Shown here piece by piece: positions 5,270-44,661 of a stretch of 64,000 nucleotides of DNA. How positions within the stretch are numbered: the first letter of the stretch is position 1; each line of letters starts with the position of its first letter. Location of the stretch: positions 186,290-250,289 of IMG/VR virus record IMGVR_UViG_3300017917_001996; one strand, given 5' to 3'. The notes below the pieces were generated by a model that was given only the letters and a program-made list of their open reading frames with translations, did no database searches and was not told where the DNA came from. A program made the translations under genes and the position numbers.

Positions 5270-5298
5270 TTGACAAAACTAAAACTAGGCTATATAAT
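5270..5298 (+). promoter_or_regulatory. Sigma70-type promoter, leaderless to ATG 5304
   Basis: TTGACA-17 nt-TATAAT, ATG 5 nt downstream, no SD. Confidence 0.8.
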
Positions 5299-5303
5299 AG
5301 CGT

Positions 5304-8300
5304 ATGAAAATTGCTATTATAGATATAATTGGGCTTCCGTATGATGGTACAACGGTACACAATCAAGGACTAGGCGGAAGTGAAAGCGCAGTAACATTCA
5401 TGGCCGAGCAGCTGGCTCGGTTGAATTTTGATGTAACTGTTTTTAATAACTGCAACATTGATCACGCCCGTCCTGGGGTATATTCGGGTGTACTGTATAG
5501 ACCACTTGAAGATCTAACTCAAGATCACGAGTTTGATATTGTTATTAGCAGCCGAACTATAATTCCATTTGTTGACCCACACAGGTATCACGAACTTAAC
5601 GACAATCGTGCATTTGCACTGCAACACTATAATCTCTATGACCGTGTAGTCTCCCGAGCACAAATGAGAATTCTTTGGATGCATGACACCTTTTGTCTAG
5701 GTGATAACATGATCGAAGAGTTGGCTGTCAGCAATCGGATTACCGATATCTTTACACTAAGTGACTTTCATCTAACCTATGTGGCTAACTGCCATCACGG
5801 ACGCCGCAGAAATTTTGAAGTACTTAAACCAAAGTTGTTTATTACTAGAAACGGTGCTAACTGTTATCACAAAGAAATCGATCTAAAGAAAAAAGACCCA
5901 AATCTCTTTGTCTATAATGCCAGTGTGACCAAAGGAATGATACCCTTGGTTAATGAAGTTTGGCCAAGATTAAAAGCACAAATACCCGAAGCTCGGTTAA
6001 AGGTAATCGGTGGTTATTACAGATTTAGCGAAAGCTCGGGACCCGATCAGCAAGAACAAGATTGGCGACGAATGGTTGCTGATTCAAGGTATGCTGAGTT
6101 GGATATTGAGTTCACCGGAGTTATTCCACAAAAAGCAATCGGTGACATCTTAGCAGAATCTAATTTTATGATATACCCAACGGCGTTTCCTGAAACGTTT
6201 GGAATATCAACATTAGAATCATTACTTTACAATACTCCAGCAATTACTTGTAGATTCGGTGCTCTTGAAGAAATTGCAGTCGAAGGTGCTTGTTACCTAA
6301 TAGACTATGCCGTTGAACCTAACAGTTTATTTCCTGATATCAATCGAGTTGAGCAAGTACAAAAATTTGTAGACCTGGCTGTACGTGCTTATCGTGATCC
6401 ATATCTACATCAACAAAAACAACAATACTGTAACGTGGTCAAAGACATCGCTGGTTGGGATAGTGTAGCTCTACAGTGGAAGCAGCATTTCTATAAGAAA
6501 GCTGGAGAGTATTTGTCGCGAGACGAATATCGTGCTGTGAGCAAAATCAATCACAAAGTGCACAAAATTTGGAATCGTCGATACACTAACCCTATAGAGT
6601 TTGAACACTACAAGCCGGGTAATGAACAACCCATTGTGGTTGTGAGTACATTCTATAACTGTGCCAACTACATTGCACGTTGCATCAAAAGTGTAGCCTC
6701 TCAAGATTACGATAATTACAGTGTCTACCTGGTTAATGATGCCAGCACAGACAACACGCTAGAAGTAATCAACCAAACATTATCCACATTGCCTGTGGAT
6801 ATTAGATCAAAGTTTAAAACAATCAATCGTGATACAAATGTTGGTGCAGTAAAAAATCAAGTTGAAGTATTTAGAAGTATTCGAGATCCTGAATCAATTG
6901 TTATGATTCTAGATGGCGACGACAGTTTAATAAACAACAATTCCATTTTTAGCTACTACAATTCTATCTATGATGGAACAACAGAGTTTACCTATGGTAG
7001 CTGTTGGAGTATGGTTGACCGCATACCTTTGATCAGCCAACCTTATCCAGAACACATCAAACAGTCTCGAGCATATAGAGAGCATAGGTTTAATTGGAAT
7101 ATGCCTTACACGCATCTTCGCACATTTAAACAATATTTGATTAACAATATTAACAATTCGGTATTCAAGGATCAAGATGGTAATTGGTTCCGTGCTGGCG
7201 GCGATGGTGCTACTTTTTATAACTTAATTGAAGCAGCTGATCCAGATAAGGTTAAATGCTTACAGGAAGTTGTCTATAACTACAACGACACTAATCCACT
7301 GAATGATTACAAGATAAATGGTCACGAACAAAATAAAACTGCCGATGCTATTCTAAATCAAAAGAAAACAGAAAGCAAATTGTATTCGGTGATTGTTCCT
7401 ACAATGTGGAAGACTGCTAAAACATTTGCAGGCTTTGCCAAATCTTTGTGTGCACACCCGTTAGTGGGCGAATTAATCATTATTAATAATCAAAGTGAGT
7501 TGACCCCTGAAGGACTCAACAATCCTAAAATTAGAATGATCGATCCGGGCAGAAATATCTATGTTAATCCTGCCTGGAACCTAGGAGTAAAAACAAGCAG
7601 ATACGATCGTTTGTGTATTGTCAATGACGATGTTATATTTGATCTGACTGTACTAGAACGATTAAAAGATAGGCTAACACCCGAATCAGGAGTATTTGGA
7701 CTTTGTCCTGGTGTAGCCGATTTTAACCAACCTCCGGTTATTAACGGTAATATCGATATTATTCCATGGTCTGGCCAACACACCTACGGCTTTGGTTGCT
7801 TGATGTTTATACACAAAAAGTCTTGGCGAGAGATTCCTGCAGGATTAGAAATTTACTATGGCGACAACTTTATCTTTGACTTGCAGCTACATGAAAAGAA
7901 AACTAACTATCTAATAACCAACATGTTGTTCAAGTCCCAGTTTGCAGCCACGACATCAGACAAATCTATTACTGCTGGATTCTTAGAAAAAGAAACACCG
8001 ATTTACGAACAAATAAAAAGCCAAGGATTTACAACTAAAAAACAAGAGATAGCACCTGCTATAAACAAAACCGCAATGCCTAAAAAAAGAATTTTAATTG
8101 CTATCCCTACTGCACGTAACATAGAAGCAGAAACATTTAAAAGCATATATGATTTAGAAATACCCGAAGGGTATACTGCCACGTTCCAATACTTCTATGG
8201 TTACAACGTTGATCAAGTTAGAAATCTGATTGCTGATTGGGTAGTTAGAGGATTTGATTATTTGTTTAGTGTAGACAGTGATATTGCATTTCCGCCAGAC

Positions 8301-9362
8301 ACTTTGAAGAAGTTATTAGCACACGATAAAGACATGGTTTCTGGTTTGTATATTCAGCGCAAGCCCGGGCAGCATATCTTAGAAGTCTATGAGCATAATG
8401 GTCGAGGTGGTTCGAGTAACATACCCTATGAGAAAATTGTTGGACGAGGATTAGTAGAAATTGCCGGCTGCGGCTTTGGTTGTGTGCTAGTTAAAGCCGA
8501 AGTAATGCGAGCCATTCCTTACCCGCATTTTGTTTATCATAGTGCAATCGACCATAAAGACACTATCAGCGAAGATGTTGATTTTTGCCGTAAAGTGTTA
8601 GCTAAAAACTTTAAGATCTGGGCTGACACAACAGTGCAGTGCCGACATATTGGTTCAGCCGAGTTTGTTATTAACAACAACATTAAGCCAGTATCTGCCG
8701 AATCGAGACTTAGAGAATTACACAGTCAACGACTATTGCCACAAGCACATGTTGAATACTTGCAAAGACTAGCAGCATTGGGATTAAATCCTCCTGTGAT
8801 ATATGATCTCGGTGCTTGTGTGTTACATTGGACCAACGAAGCTCGTAGAATATGGCCCAATGCAAAGTACTATGCATTCGAAGCCATGAGCAGTTGCGAG
8901 TTCTTATACAAAGAAGATGGTATCGAGTACGCTATGGGTTTGCTCAGCGATGTCGATGGCAAAGAATTAGACTTTTATCAAAATGAAGAACATCCCGGCG
9001 GTAACAGTTATTATCGAGAAAACTCAGAGGTGAATCCGCAGGCTCCTATGTATTTTAATGAATCTCATCGACGTCGTTTAATTAGTCGTAGTCTAGACAG
9101 CCTGGTAAAAGAAAAAGGTTTTGCTATGCCTGCCTTATTAAAAATGGACATACAAGGTGCTGAACTAGATGTACTACGCGGCTCTACACAGGTACTTCAG
9201 TCCGTGACTGATGTTATCTTAGAGTTGCAAGTTGTTGAATACAATAAAGGTGCACCACTTCGAGATACCGTATTAGCATATATGGACAGTATCGGTTTTG
9301 ACTGTATAGGTATGTTCTGTAATAACGGTCCAGACGGGGACTATCATTTCAGAAAAAGATGA
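5304..9362 (+). CDS. Multidomain glycosyltransferase (GT4 + 3x GT2-like) fused to an FkbM-type methyltransferase
   Basis: GGSE...ETFGISTLE (GT-B); VNDASTD/LDGDD, IVNDD, VDSD (GT-A DxD); YDLGAC...LKMDIQGAELDVL (FkbM). Confidence 0.85.
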   Translation: MKIAIIDIIGLPYDGTTVHNQGLGGSESAVTFMAEQLARLNFDVTVFNNCNIDHARPGVYSGVLYRPLEDLTQDHEFDIVISSRTIIPFVDPHRYHELNDNRAFALQHYNLYDRVVSRAQMRILWMHDTFCLGDNMIEELAVSNRITDIFTLSDFHLTYVANCHHGRRRNFEVLKPKLFITRNGANCYHKEIDLKKKDPNLFVYNASVTKGMIPLVNEVWPRLKAQIPEARLKVIGGYYRFSESSGPDQQEQDWRRMVADSRYAELDIEFTGVIPQKAIGDILAESNFMIYPTAFPETFGISTLESLLYNTPAITCRFGALEEIAVEGACYLIDYAVEPNSLFPDINRVEQVQKFVDLAVRAYRDPYLHQQKQQYCNVVKDIAGWDSVALQWKQHFYKKAGEYLSRDEYRAVSKINHKVHKIWNRRYTNPIEFEHYKPGNEQPIVVVSTFYNCANYIARCIKSVASQDYDNYSVYLVNDASTDNTLEVINQTLSTLPVDIRSKFKTINRDTNVGAVKNQVEVFRSIRDPESIVMILDGDDSLINNNSIFSYYNSIYDGTTEFTYGSCWSMVDRIPLISQPYPEHIKQSRAYREHRFNWNMPYTHLRTFKQYLINNINNSVFKDQDGNWFRAGGDGATFYNLIEAADPDKVKCLQEVVYNYNDTNPLNDYKINGHEQNKTADAILNQKKTESKLYSVIVPTMWKTAKTFAGFAKSLCAHPLVGELIIINNQSELTPEGLNNPKIRMIDPGRNIYVNPAWNLGVKTSRYDRLCIVNDDVIFDLTVLERLKDRLTPESGVFGLCPGVADFNQPPVINGNIDIIPWSGQHTYGFGCLMFIHKKSWREIPAGLEIYYGDNFIFDLQLHEKKTNYLITNMLFKSQFAATTSDKSITAGFLEKETPIYEQIKSQGFTTKKQEIAPAINKTAMPKKRILIAIPTARNIEAETFKSIYDLEIPEGYTATFQYFYGYNVDQVRNLIADWVVRGFDYLFSVDSDIAFPPDTLKKLLAHDKDMVSGLYIQRKPGQHILEVYEHNGRGGSSNIPYEKIVGRGLVEIAGCGFGCVLVKAEVMRAIPYPHFVYHSAIDHKDTISEDVDFCRKVLAKNFKIWADTTVQCRHIGSAEFVINNNIKPVSAESRLRELHSQRLLPQAHVEYLQRLAALGLNPPVIYDLGACVLHWTNEARRIWPNAKYYAFEAMSSCEFLYKEDGIEYAMGLLSDVDGKELDFYQNEEHPGGNSYYRENSEVNPQAPMYFNESHRRRLISRSLDSLVKEKGFAMPALLKMDIQGAELDVLRGSTQVLQSVTDVILELQVVEYNKGAPLRDTVLAYMDSIGFDCIGMFCNNGPDGDYHFRKR

Positions 9363-9364
9363 AA

Positions 9365-9390
9365 CTAAATATCTAATACTAGATATTTAG
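9365..9390 (+). promoter_or_regulatory. Perfect 11-bp hairpin containing a late promoter TAAATA
   Basis: CTAAATATCTA-ATAC-TAGATATTTAG, ending 4 nt before ATG 9395. Confidence 0.65.
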
Positions 9391-9394
9391 AAAT

Positions 9395-10324: not shown

Positions 10325-10331
10325 TTGAGAC

Positions 10332-10360
10332 TTGATCTTTTGATTGGCATTTGCTATAGT
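10332..10360 (+). promoter_or_regulatory. Sigma70-type promoter, leaderless to ATG 10368
   Basis: TTGATC-17-TATAGT with extended TG; ATG 7 nt downstream. Confidence 0.65.
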
Positions 10361-10367
10361 AGCAAAT

Positions 10368-10769
10368 ATGAAAAAAGTGTTTGTTAACGGCTCCTTTGAT
10401 TTATTACATCCTGGGCACATTAAGTTATTAAATACTGCTCGTAGTCTAGGTGACTATCTAATGGTAGCCATAGACTCTGATCGACGAATAGCCGAAAAGA
10501 AAGGTCCAGACCGTCCTGTTAACAATCAATTTACTAGATACGTTTTGATGAGCAACATCAAAGCAGTTGATCAAGTTGTTGTTTTTGACAGCGACAGTGA
10601 ATTAGAAGATATTATTAAAAATTTTCAACCAGACATTATGATGGTAGGCAGCGACTGGCGAGGACGTACAGTAATTGGATCGCAGTATGCAGGCCATTTA
10701 GAGTTTTTCGAAAGACAAGATGATTATTCAACTACCAGTATACTCCAAAATTATATTAATCGGAGATAA
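10368..10769 (+). CDS. rfaE2: Heptose-1-phosphate nucleotidyltransferase (HldE/RfaE domain II-like)
   Basis: NGSFDLLHPGH HIGH motif, KKGPDRP, YSTT; start moved to MKKVFVNG. Confidence 0.85.
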   Translation: MKKVFVNGSFDLLHPGHIKLLNTARSLGDYLMVAIDSDRRIAEKKGPDRPVNNQFTRYVLMSNIKAVDQVVVFDSDSELEDIIKNFQPDIMMVGSDWRGRTVIGSQYAGHLEFFERQDDYSTTSILQNYINRR

Positions 10770-11478
10770 CTGCATCGATCAATACCAATACGGCACTGTA
10801 GATCGTATTAGCCCTGAAGCTCCTGTTCCGGTGTTTAAGCCTGAATCAGAAGAATCTCGCCCTGGTATGGCTGCAAATGTTCAAAAAAACCTTGAAGCAC
10901 TAGGACTAACAGTGGATGCATATTTAGGTCCGGCAAGCACTAAAACAAGATTGATAGATACCAGGAGTCAACAGCATATTGTTAGAATTGATAACGATGT
11001 ACTGGCAGACCCAATTGATATATCAGGAATTGATTTCAAACACGCTCAGGCTGTGGTAATATCTGATTACAACAAAGGTTCAGTTACATACGACATGGTT
11101 GAACAAATTGTAGACCAATTTAAAGGACCTATTTTTGTTGATTCTAAAAAACACGAATTGGCAAGATTCGATGGATGCATTGTTAAGATAAATGAAAATG
11201 AATACCGTTCTAGAAATAGTATCAATGACAACTTAATTGTTACATTAGGTGCATATGGTGCTATGTGGAAACAGTACAACAATGAAGAATTCTTTGATGC
11301 AGAAAATGTAGAGATAGCTGATGTATGTGGAGCAGGTGACACCTTCCTTGCAGCTCTAGTTTATCAATATCTGAAATCAAAAAATATACCTGATGCGATT
11401 CGATTTGCTATCCGTGCCAGCGCAGTTACAGTACAACATATAGGAGTATATGCTCCTAGACTAGAGGAAATTAAATGA
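10720..11478 (+). CDS. rfaE1: Heptose-7-phosphate kinase (HldE/RfaE domain I-like, PfkB family)
   Basis: RISPEAPVPV, ISDYNKG, DVCGAGDTF. Confidence 0.88.
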   Translation: MIIQLPVYSKIILIGDNCIDQYQYGTVDRISPEAPVPVFKPESEESRPGMAANVQKNLEALGLTVDAYLGPASTKTRLIDTRSQQHIVRIDNDVLADPIDISGIDFKHAQAVVISDYNKGSVTYDMVEQIVDQFKGPIFVDSKKHELARFDGCIVKINENEYRSRNSINDNLIVTLGAYGAMWKQYNNEEFFDAENVEIADVCGAGDTFLAALVYQYLKSKNIPDAIRFAIRASAVTVQHIGVYAPRLEEIK

Positions 11479-11834
11479 CAAGACTAATGGGTCGAGTAGA
11501 AAAAGGTTGGGGTTCTGAAGAAATTTGGGCCACTAACGACAAGTATTGTGGCAAGCTAATGCACTTCAACACAGGTGCAAAATTCAGTATGCACTTCCAT
11601 GCTACAAAGGATGAAACTTGGTATGTTCTCAGTGGGCAGTTTAGTGTATTCTATATTGATACTAAAGATGCTACTTTACACGAAGCACAATTAAGTACTG
11701 GTGACACTTGGCACAATGCTCCGTTATTACCTCACCAGTTAGTATGCGTAGAAGCAGGTACAATTATTGAAGTCAGTACTCCGGACTCAGTTGAGGATAA
11801 TTATAGAGTAGCAAAAGGTGATAGTCAAAAATGA
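11475..11834 (+). CDS. Cupin protein (sugar-phosphate isomerase-like)
   Basis: KGWGSEEIW...SMHFH...KDETWYV...PHQL cupin motifs. Confidence 0.75.
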   Translation: MTRLMGRVEKGWGSEEIWATNDKYCGKLMHFNTGAKFSMHFHATKDETWYVLSGQFSVFYIDTKDATLHEAQLSTGDTWHNAPLLPHQLVCVEAGTIIEVSTPDSVEDNYRVAKGDSQK

Positions 11835-12142
11835 AATATATTGTAGACATTGATGGTACTATCTGTACCAACACTAAAGGTGATTATCAAAGTGCAGAAC
11901 CTTTTATGGACAGGATTTCATACTTCAATAATCTGTTTGACCAAGGGCACGAAATACATTATTGGACTGCTCGTGGGGGCAATTCGGGTATCGATTGGAC
12001 CACACTAACACAACAGCAATTTGCCAATTGGCAGGTGAAATACACTACATTGAAGTTGGGTAAGCCTGTTTATGATGTATGGATTGATGACAAGGCTTTT
12101 AACGGTGACACCTACTTTGAGGATGTTAAGCGTTACAGTTAA
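11831..12142 (+). CDS. Small HAD-family phosphatase
   Basis: DIDGT, WTARG, GKP...IDDKA. Confidence 0.8.
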   Translation: MKYIVDIDGTICTNTKGDYQSAEPFMDRISYFNNLFDQGHEIHYWTARGGNSGIDWTTLTQQQFANWQVKYTTLKLGKPVYDVWIDDKAFNGDTYFEDVKRYS

Positions 12143-29797: not shown

Positions 29798-30712
29798 ATG
29801 AGCGCTGAAAATTCTCTAATTAAAAGACCGTATTCATCAGAATCCTATTCTCTCGAACAGTTACAGGAATTTGCTCGATGTGCTGACCCAATCAACGGGC
29901 CCAGGCATTTCATGAGTAATTACTTTTATATACAGCATCCTATCAAGGGCAGAATGAACTATGTGCCCTTTGAATATCAAGATAGACTAATTGAAACATA
30001 TCATAATTATAGATTCAGTATTAGTCTAATGCCTCGACAAACAGGCAAGACAACCAGCGCCGCAGGATATTTATTGTGGTATGCAATGTTTAATCCTGAT
30101 AGTACTATTCTTATTGCTGCACACAAATACACAGGCGCTCAGGAAATTATGCAGCGTATTCGTTATGCTTATGAATTGTGTCCTGACTTTATTCGTGCAG
30201 GTTGTACCAGTTATAACAAGGGCAGTATTGAATTTGAAAATGGGTCGCGTATTGTGTCGCAGACAACCACAGAAACAACAGGTCGTGGTATGTCTATTAC
30301 ACTCCTATACTGTGACGAGTTTGCATTCGTAAGACCTACCATTGCTACAGAATTCTGGACTTCAATTTCGCCTACACTAAGCACTGGTGGTAAGGCTATT
30401 ATTACTAGTACCCCTAACAGTGACGAAGATCAATTTGCCTTGATCTGGAAAGGCAGTCAAAAGTGTATCGACGAGTTTGGCAATAAAACTGAACTTGGTG
30501 TAAATGGGTTTAAAGGTTACCAAGCCAATTGGTGGGAGCATCCTGACCGTGACGAAAAGTGGAAAGCTGAAGAAATAGGTCGTATTGGCGAAGAACGTTT
30601 TCGACGTGAGCACGGGTGTTTATGTGGTTCATCTCTTATTAAAATAAAACATCCTAATGGTCTAATAGAAGAAGTTACTATAAATGCTTTAAAGTCTCTA
30701 TTAAGTTCGTAA
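29798..30712 (+). CDS. terL: Terminase large subunit, N-terminal ATPase part, fused to a 31-aa N-intein
   Basis: PRQTGKTT, YCDEFAF, ITSTPN, FRREHG followed by CLCGSS. Confidence 0.93.
   Translation: MSAENSLIKRPYSSESYSLEQLQEFARCADPINGPRHFMSNYFYIQHPIKGRMNYVPFEYQDRLIETYHNYRFSISLMPRQTGKTTSAAGYLLWYAMFNPDSTILIAAHKYTGAQEIMQRIRYAYELCPDFIRAGCTSYNKGSIEFENGSRIVSQTTTETTGRGMSITLLYCDEFAFVRPTIATEFWTSISPTLSTGGKAIITSTPNSDEDQFALIWKGSQKCIDEFGNKTELGVNGFKGYQANWWEHPDRDEKWKAEEIGRIGEERFRREHGCLCGSSLIKIKHPNGLIEEVTINALKSLLSS
30617..30709 (+). other. Split intein N-fragment (31 aa)
   Basis: Block A CLCGSSLIKIK...EEVTINAL followed by stop. Confidence 0.88.
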
Positions 30713-30740
30713 TTTTTGATGAAACGGTATAAATAATAAT

Positions 30741-31424
30741 ATGAGAAAGCATAAACATCATATTATTCCTAAGCATGCCGGTGGAACCAATGATCCATCA
30801 AATCTAATAGAATTGACTATAGAGGAACATGCAGAAGCTCATCGTTTGTTATATGAAACTTACGGTAGGTGGCAAGATCGTGTAGCCTGGCTAAGTTTGT
30901 CTGGCATAATGACAAACCAAGAAAGGATATATGAGATTTTAAAAAATTCAAATCCCGGCGGGTATAAGCATTCTGAAGAAATAAAAAAACAACTTTCTGA
31001 AATGCGTAAAGGTAATAAAAATCCAATGTTTGGAAAAGTTGCTGCTAATAGTGGAATTAAACGACCTGGTATCGGTGGCCGGAAAAAAGGGTCAGGATGG
31101 TCTGACGCAGAAAGATTAAAACAATTAGAAGTTCGATCTCAACCGGGTTATTATGATTTTACTAAAGATCCGGAGAGGAATAAAAAAATAAGTCAGGCAA
31201 CTAAAGGTAGAAAAGGTTCGGCATTAGGAAAAAAATGGTTTCATAATAACGAAATTGAAACATATTCATTTAGTTGTCCTATAGGCTTTATACCTGGTAG
31301 GTTACCTGGCAGAAAATCAAACAAGGAAGGACTGCTCTGGTACAATAACGGAATTGTTAATAAGCAATTTAAAGAAGGACAACAAGTAGAAGGATTTACT
31401 CGTGGAAGAATTAATAAAAAATAA
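30741..31424 (+). CDS. Free-standing HNH homing endonuclease (NUMOD3)
   Basis: HKHHIIPKHAGG..DPSNLIELTIEEHAEAH; HSEEIKKQLS; own TATAAATA at 30728-30735. Confidence 0.88.
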   Translation: MRKHKHHIIPKHAGGTNDPSNLIELTIEEHAEAHRLLYETYGRWQDRVAWLSLSGIMTNQERIYEILKNSNPGGYKHSEEIKKQLSEMRKGNKNPMFGKVAANSGIKRPGIGGRKKGSGWSDAERLKQLEVRSQPGYYDFTKDPERNKKISQATKGRKGSALGKKWFHNNEIETYSFSCPIGFIPGRLPGRKSNKEGLLWYNNGIVNKQFKEGQQVEGFTRGRINKK

Positions 31425-31734
31425 CATCGGCCTGCAAATTTTAACAGACACAGGCTGGTCTGATTTTTCAGGACTTCTAGTAAGGGGCAGAAAGAAAACG
31501 GTACAAATACAAACGACAAATAAAAATGTTATATGTACTCTAGATCATAAATTTTTTAAACCTGATTTTACATTTGTTGAAGCACAACAATTAAGACCTC
31601 GACAAAAAATTCTAACAATTAATGGAACAGAACAAGTAGTATCAATTAAGATTCTTGACGAAAGAGAAGTATACGACTTATTTCATGTCTCGAAAAATTA
31701 TAGATTTTATGCAAACGGTATACTTGCTAAAAAT
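31402..31734 (+). other. Split intein C-fragment (111 aa)
   Basis: QILTDTGW, block B CTLDHKF, block F VYDL, terminal FYANGILAKN then Cys+1. Confidence 0.9.
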
Positions 31735-32469
31735 TGCGAATTCTTAATTTTCGACGAAACACTGATCAATGCTTCTACCTTATTAGAAATGCAGGGCACA
31801 GACCCAATCGAAAAACAAGGACAAGTACGCTGGTATCATAAACCCAAACGTGGAAGTACCTATGTGGTTGCCTTAGATCCAAGTCTTGGTACAGGTGGCG
31901 ATGCTGCTGCTATACAAGTTGTTGAACTGCCAGCATGTAAGCAAGTTGCCGAGTGGCAACACAATAAAACAGATATACGTGGGCAAATTCGAGTACTTAA
32001 AGAAATCTGTAATTATCTTTACGAAGAAATTGGAACACAAAACGACATCTACTACAGTGTTGAGAACAACACCTTAGGAGAAGCTGCCCTAATTGCTATC
32101 AGTGAAGTTGGAGAAGAAAACATACGTGGATCTTTTGCCAGTGAACCGCGTAATGGTCAGTCTCGTAAATATAGAAGAGGTTTTACAACTACAAACAAAT
32201 CAAAACTAGCAGCCTGTGCTAAGTTAAAGAGCTTGATAGAAAGCAAGAAGATGACTATATCTAGCTCTAATTTAATTTCGGAACTTAAGAACTTTGTATC
32301 TCACGGCAGCTCGTTTGAAGCTAAAATTGGCGAAACTGACGACCTAGTAATGGCAATGATCCTGGTTATCCGTGTGATACAGTATCTACAGAGCTTTGAT
32401 CCCACTCTAGACAGTTATGTTAAGGATCACGACGAGTTCATAGAACCCATGCCCTTTATTTTGATGTAA
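31402..32469 (+). CDS. terL: 111-aa C-intein fused to terminase large subunit C-terminal nuclease part
   Basis: GTG start with GAAGGA SD; after N|CEFL: ALDPSLGTGGD, VENN, DDLVMA. Confidence 0.92.
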   Translation: MEELIKNNIGLQILTDTGWSDFSGLLVRGRKKTVQIQTTNKNVICTLDHKFFKPDFTFVEAQQLRPRQKILTINGTEQVVSIKILDEREVYDLFHVSKNYRFYANGILAKNCEFLIFDETLINASTLLEMQGTDPIEKQGQVRWYHKPKRGSTYVVALDPSLGTGGDAAAIQVVELPACKQVAEWQHNKTDIRGQIRVLKEICNYLYEEIGTQNDIYYSVENNTLGEAALIAISEVGEENIRGSFASEPRNGQSRKYRRGFTTTNKSKLAACAKLKSLIESKKMTISSSNLISELKNFVSHGSSFEAKIGETDDLVMAMILVIRVIQYLQSFDPTLDSYVKDHDEFIEPMPFILM

Positions 32470-39276: not shown

Positions 39277-39305
39277 TTGACCTGATCTATAACTAGTGCT
39301 ATTAT
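39277..39305 (+). promoter_or_regulatory. Sigma70-type promoter
   Basis: TTGACC-17-TATTAT with extended TG. Confidence 0.7.
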
Positions 39306-39335: not shown

Positions 39336-39557
39336 ATGTTGAAACCCAGCCATATTCGTACTCCCCGTACTCTCTCCGAATGCTACTTTTCTGCCGGTGA
39401 TTCGACTATCGAACCTGCAATGTGGGGAAGTCGGTGGAATTCTGGTCTTCCACCAAAGAAACGTTTTATACTTAATAACCTGTCTGCGCTTTCTTCTATT
39501 GGTATAGGACTAGTTGTTATTGTTGCGGCATCTCTGTTAATGACCAATCTTAAATAA
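39336..39557 (+). CDS. Small membrane protein
   Basis: AGGA SD; C-terminal hydrophobic helix. Confidence 0.7.
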   Translation: MLKPSHIRTPRTLSECYFSAGDSTIEPAMWGSRWNSGLPPKKRFILNNLSALSSIGIGLVVIVAASLLMTNLK

Positions 39558-39566
39558 GGATCAAAA

Positions 39567-39716
39567 ATGTTTGAATCAATTGAAATCCGCCGTGCGGCTA
39601 ATGGCTTTATCCTAGTCATTACTACCGAAGACGAGACCAAAGAATATGTCTACGACACTAGTCGTAAAACACTTAAAGTCCTCAAGGACTACCTGGAGTC
39701 AAAGTCTGCCCAATGA
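39567..39716 (+). CDS. Small hypothetical protein (49 aa, not in ORF track)
   Basis: AAGGA SD; MFESIEIRRAANGFILV; ATGA overlap with next gene. Confidence 0.75.
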   Translation: MFESIEIRRAANGFILVITTEDETKEYVYDTSRKTLKVLKDYLESKSAQ

Positions 39717-40435
39717 ACCAATATGCATTTTTAGTAACCAGTGCTATTAATACCAAATTTGGTATCTTTAATAGTGAACAAAGACTTGAGCAAACTCTTG
39801 CTACTATTGCTAGCATAAAATCTCGTGTACCCGGTGCTAAGATTATCCTAGTTGAAATGGGAGCTATTCCCTTGACTGCAGAACAAACTCAAAGTCTTAG
39901 TAAAGAGGTTGATCGAGTTCTAAGTTTTAACAGTGATCAAACTGTAATTGATCTTTTTAATAGCACTGACAATTGGGATGTTGTAAAAAACGTTACTGAG
40001 GTAATGTGTTTTGGTCAGGCATTGGCCACTTTAACTAATCACACCGACGTTCTTGATGGAGTACAGCGAGCTTTTAAAGTTAGCGGTAGATATACTCTTA
40101 CTGACGACTTTGACATTAATTACTACAACCAGTATAATGTTCAGCATCATATTGTAGTTAGTCAGGCTAGATCTAGTCAGTTTCCTTATAACGTCACTGG
40201 CGTTGAACGTCAGTACATGAGTAGGCTATGGAGTTGGCCGATTTCTCTTACATCGGAAATACTTGATGTGTACACCCATGGTCTTGTTTATATGCAAGAG
40301 CGTATTGTCAACGGTGGCTACTGCGATATTGAACACATGCTATATAAATTCCTAGATCACAATAAAATTATAGAAAAGGAACTGGTAGGTATTTGTGGTA
40401 ATATTGGACCCAACGGTGCCGCAGTAAAAGATTAA
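39713..40435 (+). CDS. Glycosyltransferase-like hypothetical protein
   Basis: FLVTSAI..RLEQT..TIASI..IILVE, FKVSGRY, DIEH; located in GT cluster. Confidence 0.5.
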   Translation: MNQYAFLVTSAINTKFGIFNSEQRLEQTLATIASIKSRVPGAKIILVEMGAIPLTAEQTQSLSKEVDRVLSFNSDQTVIDLFNSTDNWDVVKNVTEVMCFGQALATLTNHTDVLDGVQRAFKVSGRYTLTDDFDINYYNQYNVQHHIVVSQARSSQFPYNVTGVERQYMSRLWSWPISLTSEILDVYTHGLVYMQERIVNGGYCDIEHMLYKFLDHNKIIEKELVGICGNIGPNGAAVKD

Positions 40436-41197
40436 ATGAATCCTTATATTAACGAACAAGACTGGAATAAGCTGCACGAACAATTTCAAACAGCACAGCC
40501 TTTTAGGCATGTCGTCATTGATAATTTTTTTAAACCTGAAGTTGCACAACAGTTATTTGACGAATTTCCAAACTATAATAGTGATGTTTGGAATGCACAT
40601 TACAATAATCCGGTAGAAAACAAAAAGGCCTGCGATCATTGGACTAAATTTCCTCCGATGACCTATAGGGTCTTTAATTTTTTTTGCGGGCGTGAGTTTA
40701 CGCACACTGTAGAACAGATCACAGGGCATCCTGAAGTGCTTCCTGATATTGGTCTACACGGCGGCGGCTGGCATGCTCATGCTAAAAGTGGCAAGTTAAA
40801 CATACACTTAGATTACAGTATTCATCCTAAACTCAAACTAGAGCGCCACTATAATCTAATTGTATATCTTACTCCAAATTGGAATTCCAGTTGGGGTGGC
40901 GGCCTTGAGTTTTGGTCACACAATCATGAAACTAATCAGCCCTTGCAGTGTGTTACTACAGTTGAGAATAAGTTTAATCGTGCTGTGATTTTTGATACAA
41001 CACAAAATTCATGGCACGGCTTACCCGAGGATTTAATTTGCCCTGATGATCAAATACGACGTAGCCTAGCTATGTATTATGTAACAAATCCTGAGACCAA
41101 TGCCCCTGACCGCCTAAGAGCCAAATTTGCTCCGTATCGAGAGCAGAATCAAGACCAAGAAATTTTAGACTTTATTGAAAAGAGACAAAAACTATGA
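40436..41197 (+). CDS. 2OG-Fe(II) oxygenase (prolyl-hydroxylase-like)
   Basis: HLD...WHG...RRSLA; PFRHVVIDNF. Confidence 0.88.
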   Translation: MNPYINEQDWNKLHEQFQTAQPFRHVVIDNFFKPEVAQQLFDEFPNYNSDVWNAHYNNPVENKKACDHWTKFPPMTYRVFNFFCGREFTHTVEQITGHPEVLPDIGLHGGGWHAHAKSGKLNIHLDYSIHPKLKLERHYNLIVYLTPNWNSSWGGGLEFWSHNHETNQPLQCVTTVENKFNRAVIFDTTQNSWHGLPEDLICPDDQIRRSLAMYYVTNPETNAPDRLRAKFAPYREQNQDQEILDFIEKRQKL

Positions 41198-41814
41198 ACG
41201 AAACTAGTAAAGCATTAATCCGTAGGCTTAACGACTCTCGTTATGCTAGTACATATTTCCGAGGTAACGGAATTGATATTGGTGCAGGGGACGATTCCCT
41301 TGGGCGTTATCAACAACAGTTTCCTTTGATTGAATCGGTTCGTGCTTGGGATATTCCCGATGGTGATGCCCAGTTAATGGAAAGTGTTGTAGATAATACT
41401 TACGATTTTGTACACAGCAGTCATTGTCTTGAACATTTAAATAATCCTTTTGAAGCATTTAAAAACTGGATTAGAATTTGTCGTCCCGGCGGACATATTA
41501 TTACTACAATACCCGACGAAGATCTTTATGAACAAGGTGTGTTTCCTAGCACATTTAATAATGATCATAAGAGTTCATGGACCATTCTTAAAGGTAAGAG
41601 TTGGAGCCCTGTAAGCGTTAATGTTATTGAACTTCTTTATCAATTCCGTAACGAGATTGAAATCTTAAAGATTGAATTAGTTAATGGTAGTTTTAACTAC
41701 AACCAGCCGCGCTACGATCAAACTCTTTATGGAATTAGCGAATGCGCCATTGAATTCATTGTTAGAAAGCGCCCACAGTCAGAAATTGATCGTCTAGGAA
41801 GACTACCCGAATGA
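41194..41814 (+). CDS. Class I SAM-dependent methyltransferase
   Basis: IDIGAG, YDFVHSSHCLEH, RICRPGG. Confidence 0.88.
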   Translation: MNETSKALIRRLNDSRYASTYFRGNGIDIGAGDDSLGRYQQQFPLIESVRAWDIPDGDAQLMESVVDNTYDFVHSSHCLEHLNNPFEAFKNWIRICRPGGHIITTIPDEDLYEQGVFPSTFNNDHKSSWTILKGKSWSPVSVNVIELLYQFRNEIEILKIELVNGSFNYNQPRYDQTLYGISECAIEFIVRKRPQSEIDRLGRLPE

Positions 41815-42641
41815 AAGACATCACTATTGTAGCCGTTGACACTTATGCACACGATCTGACTCGTTGTGCTATAGAACGTACTCTAGAAGAAATACCTTGT
41901 CGAGAAGTTCTAGTATTCAGCGACAAAAACATTTTTCCTGATGGTCGCTGGATCGATATTAATCCTATTGACATAGTTGGTTATAATACTTTGATGGTTA
42001 AACATTTATGGCCTTTTATTCGTACCGAACATGTACTAATTGTTCAGTACGACGGACTGGCTGTGAATTCCAATAATTGGACTGATGACTTTTTAAACTA
42101 TGATTATATCGGCGCAATCTGGCCCTGGGATCACCACCCTCCTGAATATAAGGTGGGCAACGGCGGATTTAGTCTGCGTAGTCGAAAATTGATTGAAGCC
42201 TGTAAGAATCATGACATGGCATTAACTAACAAGCTGCCCATGTACGAAGATTTGTATATCTGTGTGCACTACAAGAAGTACTTAGAAAGCCAGGGTATCC
42301 GTTATGCCGACATAAGTACAGCTAAAAAGTTTAGTCATGAGCACCATCCTGGTTACCAAGATACTTTCGGGTTTCACGGCACATTTAATGTTCCGTACTA
42401 CTTAGACGATCAGTATTGTGAAAAGTTTATTGAACTGTTACCAGGGTGGACTAGCGAGGGCGTTCTTTTAATGGTAGCACATTGTTTCCAGGCAGGGAAA
42501 TTTGAATTAGGTAAACTTGCACTAGAACAAGGTCGCCGAAAAACAGATAACTTTGATTCTCGTGTTAGACAGATTTTAACACAACATTCTAGCCAGTTTA
42601 ACGGCGAAGATTTTCAAACAATTTATCGACACTTAAAATGA
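41811..42641 (+). CDS. DUF5672-like putative glycosyltransferase
   Basis: LIVQYDG, YDYIGAIW, VGNGGFSLRS, FGFHG. Confidence 0.8.
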   Translation: MKDITIVAVDTYAHDLTRCAIERTLEEIPCREVLVFSDKNIFPDGRWIDINPIDIVGYNTLMVKHLWPFIRTEHVLIVQYDGLAVNSNNWTDDFLNYDYIGAIWPWDHHPPEYKVGNGGFSLRSRKLIEACKNHDMALTNKLPMYEDLYICVHYKKYLESQGIRYADISTAKKFSHEHHPGYQDTFGFHGTFNVPYYLDDQYCEKFIELLPGWTSEGVLLMVAHCFQAGKFELGKLALEQGRRKTDNFDSRVRQILTQHSSQFNGEDFQTIYRHLK

Positions 42642-43525
42642 CAAGAACAAGTATATTAGTTAATAGACAAGGTGCAAGCGGCGATGTACTAATGACATCG
42701 CCTATTGTTCGTAAGTTGCATCAAGACTACCAAGGTAACTGCGACATTGATTTTTCTGTATGGCATGAATGTGCTCCGATGATCGAAAAGAATCCTTACA
42801 TTAGGAAAGTTCTTCACACAAAACCTACAGAAGATTTAATTGCACAGTATGATCGTTATATTGACTTAGATCTAGTCTACGAACGTAACCCAGAAATTCA
42901 TGCTGTTGATGCTTATGCACTACACGCCTTTGGTACTACAGACTTTGATCGAAGTTTAGAATTGCACACCGACAGCGCCGATCAAGAAGTTGGCAACAAG
43001 TTCCAAGAGATTCTCGGAGGCAATTACATTGTGTTACATCAGCGTCGTTGGGCATGGCCAAGTAGAAACATTGACCCTGACATGTGGGCACAAGTAGTTA
43101 AACAAATACTTGAAAATACTTCGGTATATATTGTACAGGTTGGTCAGGCACACGAACCTTGTTTTACTGATCATCCGAGATTAATCGATGCTCGGGGACA
43201 ATTTACTGTACACGAACTCAAAGAAGTTATTGGCAAAAGCAAATTATTCATGGGTGTCGACTCTGCACCCGGGCACATTGCGGCTGCAACCGAAACTGAT
43301 ATGTTGCTATTGTTCACCAGTGTGCGCGAAGAATATCGCAGACCCCTGCGTTCGAAAGGGCAATTTGTTCCTATCATTCCCGACATTGATTGCTACGGTT
43401 GTCATGCCAAGAACCCTGCACCGTGTACAACATTTATTTGTCACCGTGGTGATGTGGACTGCGTAAATAAGTTTAACTCGGAAGACATTGCACAACGAGC
43501 AATTGAATTAATAAACGCACAATGA
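42638..43525 (+). CDS. GT9 (heptosyltransferase-family) glycosyltransferase
   Basis: [26 protein letters not shown]-terminal Cys cluster. Confidence 0.85.
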
Positions 43526-44661
43526 GATTCCATATTCTAGGATTACCTCACACGGTAACAAACAAAGCATACAATGCCTGTGCATACACACAGAAGGTTT
43601 GGAAATTTGGTAAAATGATGAAAGCTCGAGGGCACGAGATTATTCATTACGGGCACCCTGACAGTGACGTTATCTGCGACGAACATGTTAATGTTATTAG
43701 CAACCAAGATTTAGAAATTGCCTATGGTAATTACGATTGGCGTCGGAACTTTTTTAAGTTTGATGTTAACGACCATGCTTACCAGACATTCTATAAAAAT
43801 GCTATTCGTGAAGTTGGCTTACGTAAAAAGAAACACGACTTTATCTTGCCGTTCTGGGGTTCCGGGCATAAACCAATCTGCGACGCACATCCTGACCTAA
43901 TTACTGTTGAGCCTGGTATTGGGTATGCCGGTGGACATTGGGCAAGGTTTAAGATATTCGAAAGTTATGCGATTTATCATGCATATTATGGTTTAGATGC
44001 AGTAGGTAGATGTAAACAGGACTGGTATGACGTTGTTATTCCTAATTATTTTGACCCTGATGATTTTGAATATGCACCTGAAAACAAAGAAGATTATTTC
44101 TTGTTTGTGGGTCGAGTATATGACGGTAAAGGTGTAAATGTTGCTATTCAAGCAACAGAAGCGATTGGCGCTCGATTAAAGATTGCCGGTCAAGGTAGTT
44201 TACAGGATATGGGATATCAAGAAATCCCCAAGCATGTAGAATTTATTGGTTATGCTGATATCGAAACTCGTCGACAGTTAATGAGTCGGGCACGAGCCGC
44301 ATTTGCACCTAGTATGTATGTAGAACCATTTGGCGGTGTGCAAATTGAAATGTTAATGTCAGGTACTCCTACAATCACCACAGATTGGGGTAGTTTCTCT
44401 GAAAATAATATTCATGGATTAACTGGTTATCGGTGCCGTACATTTGAACATTTTAAATGGGCTGCACAGAATATCGGTAATATCAAACCAGAAAACTGCC
44501 GTGCTTGGGCCATGGATAATTTTAGTTTAGATCGCGTGGCTAAAATGTATGAGGAGTATTTTCAGTCAGTATTAAATATATACACTGGAAAAGGTTGGTA
44601 TGAGTCAAATGATAATCGAAAAGATTTAGATTATCTAGGTAGATTTATTCCAAAAATGTAG
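43522..44661 (+). CDS. GT4 glycosyltransferase
   Basis: [18 protein letters not shown]...GTP. Confidence 0.88.

What the first reader, a model, noticed from the sequence alone, without database searches (positions are those of the whole stretch)
39567..44661. Second glyco-tailoring operon: hydroxylase, methyltransferase and four GT-like genes including GT9
Seen: tightly coupled GT-like, 2OG-Fe(II) oxygenase, methyltransferase, DUF5672, GT9 and GT4 genes. Established: GT9 enzymes use ADP-heptose on LPS, and related enzymes heptosylate Ser/Thr-rich autotransporters; hydroxylase+GT pairs modify proteins or DNA bases. Inference: with the heptose operon and the giant GT, this forms a phage-encoded hydroxylate-glycosylate-methylate system acting on fibres, host LPS or DNA.
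Basis: partly seen in the sequence, partly recalled or inferred. Interest (0 to 1): 0.65.

Follow-up and report, generated by a model that had tools for sequence, protein, structure and literature searches.

The report
Phage heptose-type glycan-building gene island
A large freshwater phage carries a tightly packed set of soluble sugar-transferring and tailoring enzymes, built around a previously unannotated transferase paired with a heptosyltransferase-like enzyme. The set probably decorates a protein or the host envelope rather than DNA, and it is one more example of the sugar-gene islands already known in big aquatic phages.

Summary
Window 39567-44661 carries seven back-to-back + strand ORFs:
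- a conserved 49-aa protein;
- a 240-aa protein with no family match but a confident GT-A fold;
- a Tpa1/OGFOD1-like 2OG-Fe(II) oxygenase;
- a SAM methyltransferase;
- a DUF5672 protein;
- a divergent GT9;
- a GT4.

The record is a 250-kb fragment (about 71% complete) of a jumbo myovirus known only from metagenomes.

Across 62 related viral loci, the conserved core is the GT-A protein plus GT9 (52 of 62). The GT4 (17), DUF5672 (17), oxygenase (10) and methyltransferase (8) are lineage-specific accessories. In 13 distant loci, HldE-like kinase, cupin and adenylyltransferase genes, plus an HldD-like epimerase in the one locus examined (L043), sit under 1 kb downstream of GT9.

A DNA target is disfavoured. 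No TET/JBP match was found, and the ThyA of complete relatives looks canonical.

The island lies in a region with sigma70-type promoters and lacks the late-promoter motif found before the tail genes.

The acceptor is unresolved. I favour a protein (0.4) over host LPS or envelope (0.3). The "hydroxylate-glycosylate-methylate" pathway is not supported, because the hydroxylase is dispensable and also occurs away from any GT. Interest is moderate.

The parts
39277..39305 (+). sigma70-like promoter-like site (TTGACC, 17 nt, TATTAT, with TG before the -10) ahead of the 73-aa membrane-protein gene and the island
   Evidence: 10 of 12 matches. No late-type ATAAATA motif occurs anywhere between 34531 and 53150.
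39336..39557 (+). 73-aa protein with one C-terminal hydrophobic segment. It is adjacent to the island, but its membership is uncertain.
   Evidence: maximum KD19 2.39 at residue 51. tblastn found homologues in only two related loci, L009 and L011.
39567..39716 (+). 49-aa conserved small protein (s49), start-stop coupled (ATGA) to the GT-A gene. It marks the left border of the variable sugar island across the clade.
   Evidence: Identity is 50-87%. It always lies upstream on the same strand, from 3 nt of overlap to 8.4 kb from the GT-A gene.
39713..40435 (+). 240-aa soluble GT-A-fold protein of an unannotated family (here 'GT-A240'), the anchor gene of the island
   Evidence: No family match. 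Fold evidence. 472 hits in the word search and 1,542 representative clusters in the profile search.
40110..40138 (+). perfect sigma70 consensus (TTGACA, 17 nt, TATAAT) inside the GT-A gene, about 300 nt upstream of the oxygenase gene. It may be an internal promoter.
40436..41197 (+). 2OG-Fe(II) oxygenase of the prolyl-hydroxylase/Tpa1/OGFOD1 type, with HxD...H...R present. It is an accessory gene of the island.
   Evidence: (OGFOD1, 2.7e-5)
41194..41814 (+). class I SAM-dependent methyltransferase (accessory)
41811..42641 (+). DUF5672 protein (accessory). Its activity is unknown and a GT-A-like nature is only a lead.
42638..43525 (+). divergent GT9 (heptosyltransferase-like GT-B) with a clade-invariant C-terminal Cys4 motif (C252, C255, C268, C275). 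It is the core partner of GT-A240.
43522..44661 (+). GT4 glycosyltransferase (EX7E motif present), 69-71% identical to GTs of Synechococcus phages S-CAM7 and ACG-2014f
   Evidence: (phrog_3408, 1.5e-190)
5304..9362 (+). linked locus: 1,352-aa multidomain GT4 + GT2 + FkbM-methyltransferase protein behind a perfect sigma70-like promoter at 5270-5298
   Evidence: Homologues follow GT9 in L055 and L077.
10344..12142 (+). linked locus: split HldE-like adenylyltransferase (10344-10769) and kinase (10720-11478), a cupin (11475-11834) and a small HAD-like phosphatase (11831-12142). This is the putative ADP-heptose supply.
   Evidence: (rfaE_dom_II 8e-35, rfaE_dom_I 8e-41, both under the equivalog cut-offs)

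Best explanation
The region is the local version of a variable sugar island that is conserved in one clade of freshwater jumbo myoviruses.

Shown:
- The constant core is a soluble GT-A-fold transferase of an unannotated family plus a divergent GT9 (heptosyltransferase-type GT-B) that carries a Cys4 knuckle.
- This phage adds a GT4, a SAM methyltransferase, a DUF5672 protein and a Tpa1/OGFOD1-like 2OG oxygenase.
- All six enzymes lack membrane segments.

Inferred:
- Transcription starts from sigma70-type (early or middle) promoters.
- The GT9 takes ADP-heptose, made by the phage's split HldE-like kinase and adenylyltransferase at 10344-11478, or by the host in relatives that lack those genes.
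- Together with GT-A240 and the GT4, the GT9 builds a short heptose-containing oligosaccharide in the cytoplasm, which the methyltransferase probably caps.
- The oxygenase is a passenger or an optional tailoring step, not the step that creates the acceptor.

My choice of acceptor is a protein, most plausibly a phage structural or fibre protein. Host LPS core is the close rival.
For: Gene content and folds.

GT-A240 and GT9 are linked in 52 of 62 related loci, and GT9 is in 10 of 10 large related records.

Link to ADP-heptose:
- PfkB, cupin and adenylyltransferase genes lie under 1 kb downstream of GT9 in 13 loci.
- L043 also carries an HldD-like gene: heptose_epim 2.2e-61, 208 bits against a cut-off of 275.
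- The window genes hit rfaE_dom_I and rfaE_dom_II best.

No membrane segments in any of the six enzymes.

Early-type setting:
- There are 18 sites matching the sigma70 consensus at 11 of 12 or better on the + strand, against 3-7 in simulated genomes. 12 of the 18 lie in the 5.6% of the genome that is intergenic.
- The motif ATAAATA precedes the tail sheath, tail-tube-like and other genes, and is absent from 34.5-53.1 kb.

Hints for a protein acceptor:
- In a Polaromonas MAG, the GT-A240 domain is the C-terminus of a 1,006-aa TPR + GT41 (OGT/HMW1C-type) protein, followed by GT4, GT2 and methyltransferase genes.
- The S-SRM01 homologue lies beside a TPR protein, a 2OG oxygenase and tail-fibre genes.
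- The 69-71% identical GT4 of S-CAM7 and ACG-2014f lies between collagen-like or large structural genes and the tail-fibre gene, next to a 2OG oxygenase.
- The GT9 model matches the protein heptosyltransferase TibC almost as well as it matches WaaC and WaaF (Z 22.4 against 23.0 and 23.9).
- Its Cys4 motif lies near the C-terminus, roughly where the sequence places TibC's iron finger (Cys339/342/358/370; PMC4358343).
- The phage's other sugar locus sits among fibre-like (Laminin_G_3, Gly_rich_2) and tail genes.
Against: - No acceptor was identified, and none of the hints is direct.
- The island sits in the replication and recombination block (gp32, UvsX, UvsY ... helicase), not among structural genes, and it lacks the late motif.
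- The set GT9 + GT4 + GT8-like GT-A is also the toolkit of LPS-core assembly.
- The TibC-type N-terminal beta-barrel is absent, and sequence similarity to TibC is weak (E 0.15).
- A residue-level match of the two Cys4 motifs could not be shown.
- HldE-type kinase genes are absent from 8 of 10 large related records, including three that are at least 92% complete. The heptose donor is therefore inferred, not shown.
- The HldE-like scores are below the equivalog cut-offs.
- No GmhA (SIS) gene is present in the 250 kb held.
- GT-A240 lacks a canonical DxD after beta-4.
Confidence: 0.4

Rival explanations
1. Host envelope remodelling. The soluble GT9, GT4 and GT8-like GT-A act at the cytoplasmic face of the inner membrane on the host's LPS core (or another lipid-linked glycan). 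They change the cell surface early in infection, for example to block superinfection or to keep progeny phage from sticking to debris.
For: - The family set mirrors the LPS-core toolkit: GT9 as in WaaC/F/Q, GT4 as in WaaG, GT8 as in WaaO/J/R (established knowledge).
- The best GT9 family hits are LPS heptosyltransferase III and RfaQ.
- The GT9 model's nearest structures include WaaF and WaaC.
- The nearest named structural cluster for GT-A240 is GT8 from Pseudomonadota.
- Early-type promoters.
- This is the reading usually proposed for GT and rfaE genes of pelagimyophages and cyanomyophages (PMC7029224; PMC12801897; PMC10747093).
Against: - The GT9 scores far under every LPS heptosyltransferase equivalog cut-off (70 against 170 bits), and it carries a Cys4 insertion.
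- The island has no priming phosphoglycosyltransferase, flippase, polymerase or any membrane protein among the six enzymes.
- The host is unknown.
- The fusion of the GT-A240 domain to TPR-GT41 in a bacterium points to proteins rather than lipid-linked acceptors.
- None of the papers read tested this reading experimentally.
Confidence: 0.3
2. DNA hypermodification. The GTs glycosylate a hydroxylated base in phage DNA (heptose on 5hmC has been reported for other phage GT clusters), and the oxygenase makes the hydroxyl group.
For: - Phage GT-A and GT-B enzymes related to LPS enzymes put hexose, HexNAc or heptose on 5hmC (bioRxiv 10.1101/2023.12.21.572611).
- The island lies in the replication block and has early-type promoters.
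- A dCMP deaminase gene lies beside the island in L058.
Against: - No Tet_JBP match in this record or in four large relatives. The control genomes did not ring either, so sensitivity was not proven.
- The oxygenase is of the P4H/OGFOD1 type and is absent from most related islands.
- The only ThyA homologue in the three relatives that are at least 92% complete scores 354-358 bits. The two that were translated keep the Asn in the PFN motif, which is typical of dUMP-specific thymidylate synthase (the residue rule is from my own knowledge).
- No ThyA in the 250 kb held.
- No QueC or TGT/DpdA.
Confidence: 0.08
3. The 2OG oxygenase first hydroxylates a Pro or Lys of a fibre protein, the GTs glycosylate that hydroxyl, and the methyltransferase caps the glycan. 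This would resemble collagen Hyl-glycosylation or the cytoplasmic Skp1 Hyp-glycosylation pathway.
For: - The oxygenase belongs to the prolyl-hydroxylase superfamily and has intact HxD...H...R residues.
- Oxygenase and GT genes lie next to collagen-like and fibre genes in cyanophages.
- The fold hits of GT-A240 include the Skp1 alpha-galactosyltransferase and the collagen LH3/ColGalT1 complex, but among 150 or so other GT-A enzymes.
Against: - The oxygenase is in only 10 of 62 related islands, while the GT core persists.
- A close homologue stands in another phage without GTs.
- The cyanophage oxygenases next to the GT4 homologue are not detectably related to this one (no tblastn hit).
- Gene order is shuffled between relatives.
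Confidence: 0.12
4. No single pathway. The stretch is an insertion hotspot downstream of the conserved s49 gene, where unrelated sugar and oxygenase morons accumulate. They are packed tightly only because the whole genome is.
For: - The distance from s49 to GT-A240 varies from 3 nt of overlap to 8.4 kb, and the content is variable.
- Tight junctions are common genome-wide.
- The accessories vary widely between relatives.
Against: The GT-A240/GT9 pair is kept in 84% of loci across 45-88% protein identity. Where sugar-nucleotide genes are present, they join the same island. That pattern is what a shared pathway with interchangeable tailoring steps would give.
Confidence: 0.1

Closest known systems
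GT and rfaE ('LPS-related') gene islands in the hypervariable regions of pelagimyophages and cyanomyophages (PMC7029224; PMC12801897)
   Same: - Large aquatic T4-type phages carry several GTs, nucleotide-sugar enzymes and 2OG oxygenases in variable islands, with function untested.
- The GT4 here is 69-71% identical to a cyanophage GT.
   Different: - This island sits in the replication block of a CBB/GAP32-like jumbo lineage (UvsX 67-69% identical).
- Its core is an unannotated GT-A family plus a Cys4-bearing GT9. Neither gave a hit closer than 30% identity in 50,697 phage records.
LPS inner-core heptosyltransferases WaaC, WaaF and WaaQ (CAZy GT9) with HldE, HldD and GmhA/B
   Same: - GT-B fold: Z 23-24 to WaaF and WaaC.
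- A G-D motif at the N-terminus and a D-S-x-x-x-H donor motif.
- HldE-like and HldD-like genes are linked in relatives.
   Different: - Scores lie far below the equivalog cut-offs.
- The protein is 295 aa rather than about 320-350, and has an added Cys4 motif.
- No GmhA was found. A cupin stands in the cluster where an isomerase would be expected.
- The acceptor is unknown.
Bacterial autotransporter heptosyltransferases TibC and Aah (BAHT; PMC4358343)
   Same: - A GT9-like catalytic domain that uses ADP-heptose on protein Ser residues.
- A Cys4 metal finger inserted in the C-lobe.
- Structural match Z 22.4 over 270 residues.
   Different: - No N-terminal beta-barrel.
- Cys spacing is CxxC-12-C-6-C, against C339/C342/C358/C370 in TibC.
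- Sequence match is only E 0.15.
- No autotransporter substrate is known.
Phage DNA sugar-hypermodification clusters (5mYOX/TET or ThyA-homologue plus GT-A/GT-B; Pyle et al., bioRxiv 10.1101/2023.12.21.572611; NAR 2026, PMC13326640)
   Same: Phage GT-A and GT-B enzymes derived from envelope-glycan enzymes, heptose among the sugars, and nucleotide-sugar genes alongside.
   Different: The defining generator of a hydroxylated base (TET/JBP or a ThyA-type hydroxymethylase or hydroxylase) was not found.
Autonomous glycosylation machinery of giant viruses (PBCV-1 A064R, mimivirus fibril glycans) and virion glycosylation of mycobacteriophages (cited in PMC12619734)
   Same: - Virus-encoded soluble GTs, sugar methyltransferases and nucleotide-sugar enzymes that decorate virion proteins in the cytoplasm.
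- The PBCV-1 capsid GT (2p6w) is among the fold hits (Z 11.9).
   Different: No virion glycoprotein is known here, and there is no specific sequence relationship. These are resemblances of kind only.

Membership tests
CAZy GT9 / Pfam PF01075 | Pfam model matched above the gathering score | tested here: met
   31.7 bits against 22. All 51 homologues carry PF01075.
CAZy GT9 / Pfam PF01075 | GT-B fold whose nearest solved structures are GT9 enzymes | tested here: met
   Z values: 27.0 (3TOV), 23.9 (WaaF), 23.0 (WaaC), 22.4 (TibC). The next unrelated GT-B scores 12.5. Model pLDDT 93.1.
CAZy GT9 / Pfam PF01075 | N-terminal G-D catalytic motif and C-lobe D-S-x-x-x-H nucleotide-sugar motif | tested here: met
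   G15, D16, D208 and H213 are invariant, and S209 is nearly so. They align to the same motifs of 3TOV and WaaF. The equivalence to WaaC D13 is from memory.
CAZy GT9 / Pfam PF01075 | ADP-heptose as donor | not testable with these tools
   Only genomic linkage to HldE-like and HldD-like genes in relatives.
LPS heptosyltransferase I/II/III orthologues (TIGR02193, TIGR02195, TIGR02201) | score above the NCBIfam equivalog cut-off | tested here: not met
   70.3 against 170.2, 30.8 against 134.6 and 27.3 against 185.3 bits.
BAHT (TibC/Aah) protein heptosyltransferases | N-terminal beta-barrel domain (TibC residues 1-97) | tested here: not met
   The protein starts directly with the N-lobe. The structural alignment covers TibC 92-390 only (PMC4358343).
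BAHT (TibC/Aah) protein heptosyltransferases | Cys4 iron-finger insertion in the C-lobe | tested here: inconclusive
   An invariant Cys4 is present at 252/255/268/275. Residue-level equivalence to TibC C339/342/358/370 was not shown.
GT-A fold glycosyltransferases (nearest: GT8/GT6) | GT-A Rossmann-like fold | tested here: met
   (TM 0.68 to a GT8 cluster).
GT-A fold glycosyltransferases (nearest: GT8/GT6) | DxD metal/nucleotide motif after beta-4 and a C-terminal His | tested here: inconclusive
   - No DxD at the strand end. Instead there is an invariant S-G-R-Y at 124-127.
- A D-x-F-D follows at 131-134.
- An invariant D-I-E-H lies at 205-208.
GT-A fold glycosyltransferases (nearest: GT8/GT6) | sequence membership in a curated GT family | tested here: not met
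   No Pfam, PHROG or NCBIfam hit for the window protein or for nine distant members.
2OG-Fe(II) oxygenase, P4H/Tpa1/OGFOD1 branch (PF13640) | Pfam above cut-off, plus the HxD...H iron triad and a 2OG-binding Arg | tested here: met
   54.8 against 27 bits. H-L-D, the later W-H-G and R-R-S are seen in the sequence. OGFOD1 is the best solved relative. JGI names homologues Tpa1-like.
TET/JBP 5-methylpyrimidine dioxygenases (PF12851) | match to the Tet_JBP model | tested here: not met
   No match in the protein or in five records. The control genomes gave no hit either.
GT4 (PF00534) | Pfam above cut-off and the EX7E motif | tested here: met
   64.4 against 26.4 bits. E-P-F-G-G-V-Q-I-E is in the sequence. 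phrog_3408 at 1.5e-190.
HldE (RfaE) ADP-heptose synthase, linked locus 10344-11478 | rfaE_dom_I and rfaE_dom_II equivalog scores | tested here: inconclusive
   These are the best hits (140 and 120 bits) but lie below the cut-offs of 345 and 181.5. The domains are split and in reversed order.
Phage DNA glycosylation clusters | a hydroxylated-base generator (5mYOX/TET or a ThyA-type hydroxymethylase) in the genome | tested here: not met
   The record is only about 71% complete, so absence is not proven.
Seroconverting gtrABC-type O-antigen modification | membrane GtrA flippase, bactoprenol GT and polytopic GtrC | tested here: not met
   None of the six enzymes has a hydrophobic segment.

The most novel reading that the evidence does not exclude
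The Cys4-bearing GT9 is a virus-encoded protein heptosyltransferase, analogous to TibC. It uses phage-made ADP-heptose to start a heptose-based O-glycan on a phage fibre or capsid-decoration protein. GT-A240, the GT4 and the giant GT then extend and methylate the glycan. This would be a self-contained cytoplasmic protein-glycosylation machine in a bacteriophage, comparable to those of giant viruses.
Probability: 0.2. Interest if true: 0.75.

Novelty: new variant of a known kind. Interest (0 to 1): 0.45.

Why it matters
Sugar-gene islands in large aquatic phages are common and are routinely labelled 'LPS-related'. None of the papers read here reports an experimental test of that label.

This analysis gives four things that make the question testable:
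- A defined, conserved two-enzyme core: an unannotated GT-A family with about 1,500 sequence clusters, plus a Cys4-bearing GT9.
- Genomic evidence for the donor (ADP-heptose).
- Arguments against a DNA target.
- A bacterial fusion of the GT-A domain to a TPR-GT41 protein glycosyltransferase, which points to proteins.

If the acceptor proves to be a virion protein, this would extend virus-encoded protein glycosylation, so far known from giant viruses and mycobacteriophages, to heptose chemistry in Gram-negative jumbo phages. If it is LPS, it would be the first tested case of the long-assumed surface remodelling by lytic aquatic phages.

Tried and rejected
- Megablast of the region against 50,697 phage records: no match.
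- tblastn of the GT9: none.
- tblastn of GT-A240: only S-SRM01, at 30% identity.
- phmmer of GT-A240, GT9 and DUF5672 against PDB sequences: nothing usable. A DUF5672 profile against PDB also gave nothing.
- hhalign of DUF5672 against GT-A240: no relation, probability 0.1.
- Profiles of the GT9 C-terminal Cys4 region against PDB, to align it with the TibC iron finger: no TibC match.
- Complex prediction of s49 with GT-A240: no verdict (score 0.26, mark 0.32). This is not evidence either way.
- Flagellin genes near the bacterial GT-A240 homologues, to test for a flagellin glycosylation island: none nearby.
- QueC and TGT/DpdA searches, after noticing a GTP cyclohydrolase I gene: none.
- The T4 late-promoter octamer TATAAATA is not enriched in the window by count. 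The shorter ATAAATA motif upstream of genes was informative.
- Rfam scan of 29-46 kb: no family.
- The 'moraphage' lineage (PMC12619734) was considered as the phage's identity and dropped. Those phages are described as lacking much of the machinery of other large phages, whereas this record carries UvsX, UvsY, gp32 and helicase genes.
- One contig look-up failed because the remote machine did not answer.

Full report
**What is there.** The window is the last 64 kb of a single 250,289-bp virus record that CheckV rates as about 71% complete. Between 39567 and 44661 there are seven + strand ORFs with junction gaps of 0 to -4 nt.

- A 49-aa ORF (s49) lies at 39567-39716.
- Six enzymes of 240, 253, 206, 276, 295 and 379 aa follow.
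- Pfam assigns five of them above its cut-offs: 2OG-FeII_Oxy_3, Methyltransf_23/11, DUF5672, Glyco_transf_9 and Glycos_transf_1.
- The 240-aa protein matches nothing in Pfam, PHROGs or NCBIfam.
- Its AlphaFold2 model, built from 39 homologues, is confident (pLDDT 93.8) and is a GT-A fold. Foldseek gives glycogenin (GT8) and alpha-1,3-GalT (GT6) at 4e-8 to 1e-6. VIA-align gives Z 11-13.4 to many GT-A families. The nearest named ESM Atlas cluster is GT8 (TM 0.68).

That DUF5672 is "GT-like" remains unshown. Tight packing is real but ordinary for this genome: 46% of same-strand junctions are 10 nt or less.

**What kind of phage.**
- The tail sheath (19678-23025), a tail-tube-like gene, the gp15 sheath stabiliser, terminase, gp32, UvsX, UvsY and a helicase identify a T4-type myovirus.
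- UvsX is 67-69% identical to that of the 350-kb jumbo phages Vibrio 2.275.O, XbC2, CBB and GAP32, and less than 60% identical to cyanophage UvsX.
- Related contigs reach 320-374 kb.
- No cultured phage has a close homologue of the island.

**Comparative anatomy of the island.** GT-A240 has 472 homologues in the word search and 1,542 representative clusters in the profile search. Nearly all are stand-alone proteins of about 240 aa.

I fetched 80 IMG/VR loci around it and mapped the window's proteins on them. Among the 62 loci with at least 5 kb downstream:

| Gene | Loci with it (of 62) |
|---|---|
| GT9 (within 3.4 kb) | 52 |
| GT4 | 17 |
| DUF5672 | 17 |
| HldE-like kinase | 13 |
| oxygenase | 10 |
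| methyltransferase | 8 |

- Gene order is shuffled even among close relatives (L003 and L005).
- The core is therefore GT-A240 plus GT9, and the rest are interchangeable accessories.
- s49 is 50-87% identical throughout. It always lies upstream on the same strand, from 3 nt of overlap to 8.4 kb away, so it marks the left edge of a variable island.

**Link to the heptose genes.**
- In 13 distant loci, a PfkB kinase, a cupin and a cytidylyltransferase-like gene lie 0.73-0.98 kb downstream of GT9. These are homologues of window 10720-11478, 11475-11834 and 10344-10769.
- L043 reads: dTDP-glucose-type 4,6-dehydratase, GT-A240, sugar C-methyltransferase, GT9, an unknown gene, kinase, cupin, an unknown gene, adenylyltransferase, an ADP-glyceromanno-heptose 6-epimerase-like protein (2.2e-61), and a GGACT protein.
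- The window's two enzymes hit rfaE_dom_I (8e-41) and rfaE_dom_II (8e-35) best, although below the equivalog cut-offs. A small HAD-like phosphatase follows them.
- Homologues of the giant GT (5304-9362) follow GT9 in L055 and L077.

So the two sugar loci of this phage are one functional unit that is merged in some relatives. GT9 is in 10 of 10 large related records, but the kinase is in only 2 of 10 and in none of the three that are at least 92% complete. Those phages must take the donor from the host or use another one. No GmhA-type isomerase was found. The cupin may replace it, but that is inference.

**The GT9.**
- It is a true GT9 by model score, motifs and fold. Z is 27.0, 23.9, 23.0 and 22.4 to 3TOV, WaaF, WaaC and TibC, and drops to 12.5 for the next unrelated GT-B.
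- It is not an orthologue of any LPS heptosyltransferase.
- It carries a clade-invariant CxxC-12-C-6-C motif near the C-terminus, just before the last helix.
- TibC, the autotransporter heptosyltransferase, has a Cys4 iron finger inserted in the same lobe, and that finger contacts its protein substrate (PMC4358343).
- I could not align the two fingers residue by residue, and the TibC beta-barrel is absent. This is a lead, not a membership.

**The oxygenase.**
- It has the HxD...H...R residues.
- Its best solved relative is OGFOD1, and JGI names its homologues Tpa1-like prolyl hydroxylases.
- It has over 3,200 homologues, and a 59%-identical copy sits in another large phage contig with no GT around it.
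- Together with its presence in only 10 of 62 islands, this argues that it does not create the acceptor for the GTs.

**Which target?**

*DNA.*
- No TET/JBP match was found in this record or in four large relatives (with no positive control).
- The only ThyA homologue of the near-complete relatives scores about 355 bits. In the two relatives I translated, it keeps the Asn of the P-F-N motif, so it looks like an ordinary thymidylate synthase.
- QueC and DpdA are absent.
- The published DNA-glycosylation clusters need such a generator of a hydroxylated base.
- I rate DNA at about 0.08.

*Timing.*
- Sites matching the sigma70 consensus at 11 of 12 or better are three- to five-fold more frequent than in simulated genomes. 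Two thirds of them fall in the 5.6% of the genome that is intergenic.
- Such sites precede the giant GT, gp32 and the genes just downstream of the island. A 10-of-12 site with an extended -10 precedes the island, and a perfect site lies inside GT-A240.
- The motif ATAAATA lies 25-40 nt upstream of the tail sheath, tail-tube-like and other genes. It is absent from 34.5-53.1 kb.
- The island is thus probably early or middle. That fits the envelope and DNA readings slightly better than a virion reading, but it excludes none of them.

*Protein.*
- In a Polaromonas MAG, the GT-A240 domain is fused to a TPR + GT41 protein. To my knowledge, all characterised GT41 enzymes glycosylate proteins. GT4, GT2 and methyltransferase genes follow it.
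- In cyanophage S-SRM01, the only cultured-phage homologue lies beside a TPR protein, a 2OG oxygenase and tail-fibre genes.
- The GT4's cyanophage orthologues lie between collagen-like or large structural genes and the tail fibre.
- The giant GT and the heptose genes sit among fibre-like and tail genes.

*Envelope.*
- GT9 + GT4 + GT8-like is also the LPS-core toolkit, and surface remodelling is the literature's usual guess.
- However, no membrane or priming component is present.

I therefore commit to a cytoplasmic, heptose-containing glycan built on a protein (0.4), with LPS or envelope at 0.3.

**Novelty and verdict.** Islands of GTs, rfaE and 2OG oxygenases in big aquatic phages are on record (PMC7029224, PMC12801897, PMC10747093), and phage GTs that use heptose are known for DNA. 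Three things are new here:
- the defined core, an unannotated GT-A family plus a Cys4-bearing GT9;
- its linkage to ADP-heptose genes;
- the bacterial fusion that points to proteins.

I found no paper describing this cluster. It is a new variant of a known kind, of moderate interest, and its acceptor can only be settled at the bench.

Noticed in passing
window 29798-32469: The large terminase gene is split. An N-terminal ATPase ORF lies at 29798-30712, an HNH homing-endonuclease ORF at 30741-31424, and an ORF at 31402-32469 whose terminase match starts only at about residue 110. Relatives have one 521-aa TerL (L003, L005). This looks like an insertion of about 1 kb, either an intron or a free-standing homing endonuclease. 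No Rfam intron model matched.
   Followed up: partly
window 40110-40138: A perfect sigma70 consensus (TTGACA, 17 nt, TATAAT) lies inside the GT-A240 coding sequence, about 300 nt upstream of the oxygenase gene. It is one of 18 near-perfect (11 of 12 or better) + strand sites in the genome, and most of the others are intergenic.
   Followed up: partly
window 39567-39716 and about 60 IMG/VR loci: A 49-53-aa protein (s49) is far more conserved (50-87%) than the enzymes next to it. It always lies upstream of GT-A240 at variable distance. Its function is unknown, and a complex prediction with GT-A240 gave no verdict.
   Followed up: partly
whole genome; window examples 15066, 19640, 23130, 23828, 26271, 26779: The motif ATAAATA is depleted overall but sits 25-40 nt upstream of the tail sheath, tail-tube-like and other genes. 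It is probably this lineage's late promoter, a shortened form of the T4 TATAAATA.
   Followed up: partly
L097 (G000:C1:52000-70000), locus 6573-11550: This is a third sugar-related spot outside the window. It holds a weak GT-B-like 408-aa protein, an SDR epimerase/dehydratase (326 aa), GTP cyclohydrolase I, an HNH endonuclease and a Bax1-I family membrane protein. No QueC or DpdA is present, so nothing points to 7-deazaguanine DNA.
   Followed up: partly
L093:1737-4757 (Polaromonas MAG): A 1,006-aa bacterial protein joins TPR repeats, a GT41 (OGT-like) domain and a GT-A240 domain, and is followed by GT4, GT2 and methyltransferase genes. This looks like an uncharacterised bacterial protein-glycosylation locus. 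No flagellin gene was found in the MAG.
   Followed up: partly
L058:8117-8872 (- strand): In the 320-354-kb relatives, an adenylyltransferase (rfaE_dom_II-like) domain is fused to a mannose-6-phosphate-isomerase-type cupin. This suggests that the cupin and the nucleotidyltransferase act on the same sugar phosphate.
   Followed up: no
window 1142-5266 and 9395-10324: Two Gly_rich_2 proteins flank the giant GT, and the larger one also has a Laminin_G_3 lectin-like domain. They are candidate fibre proteins and candidate glycan acceptors.
   Followed up: no
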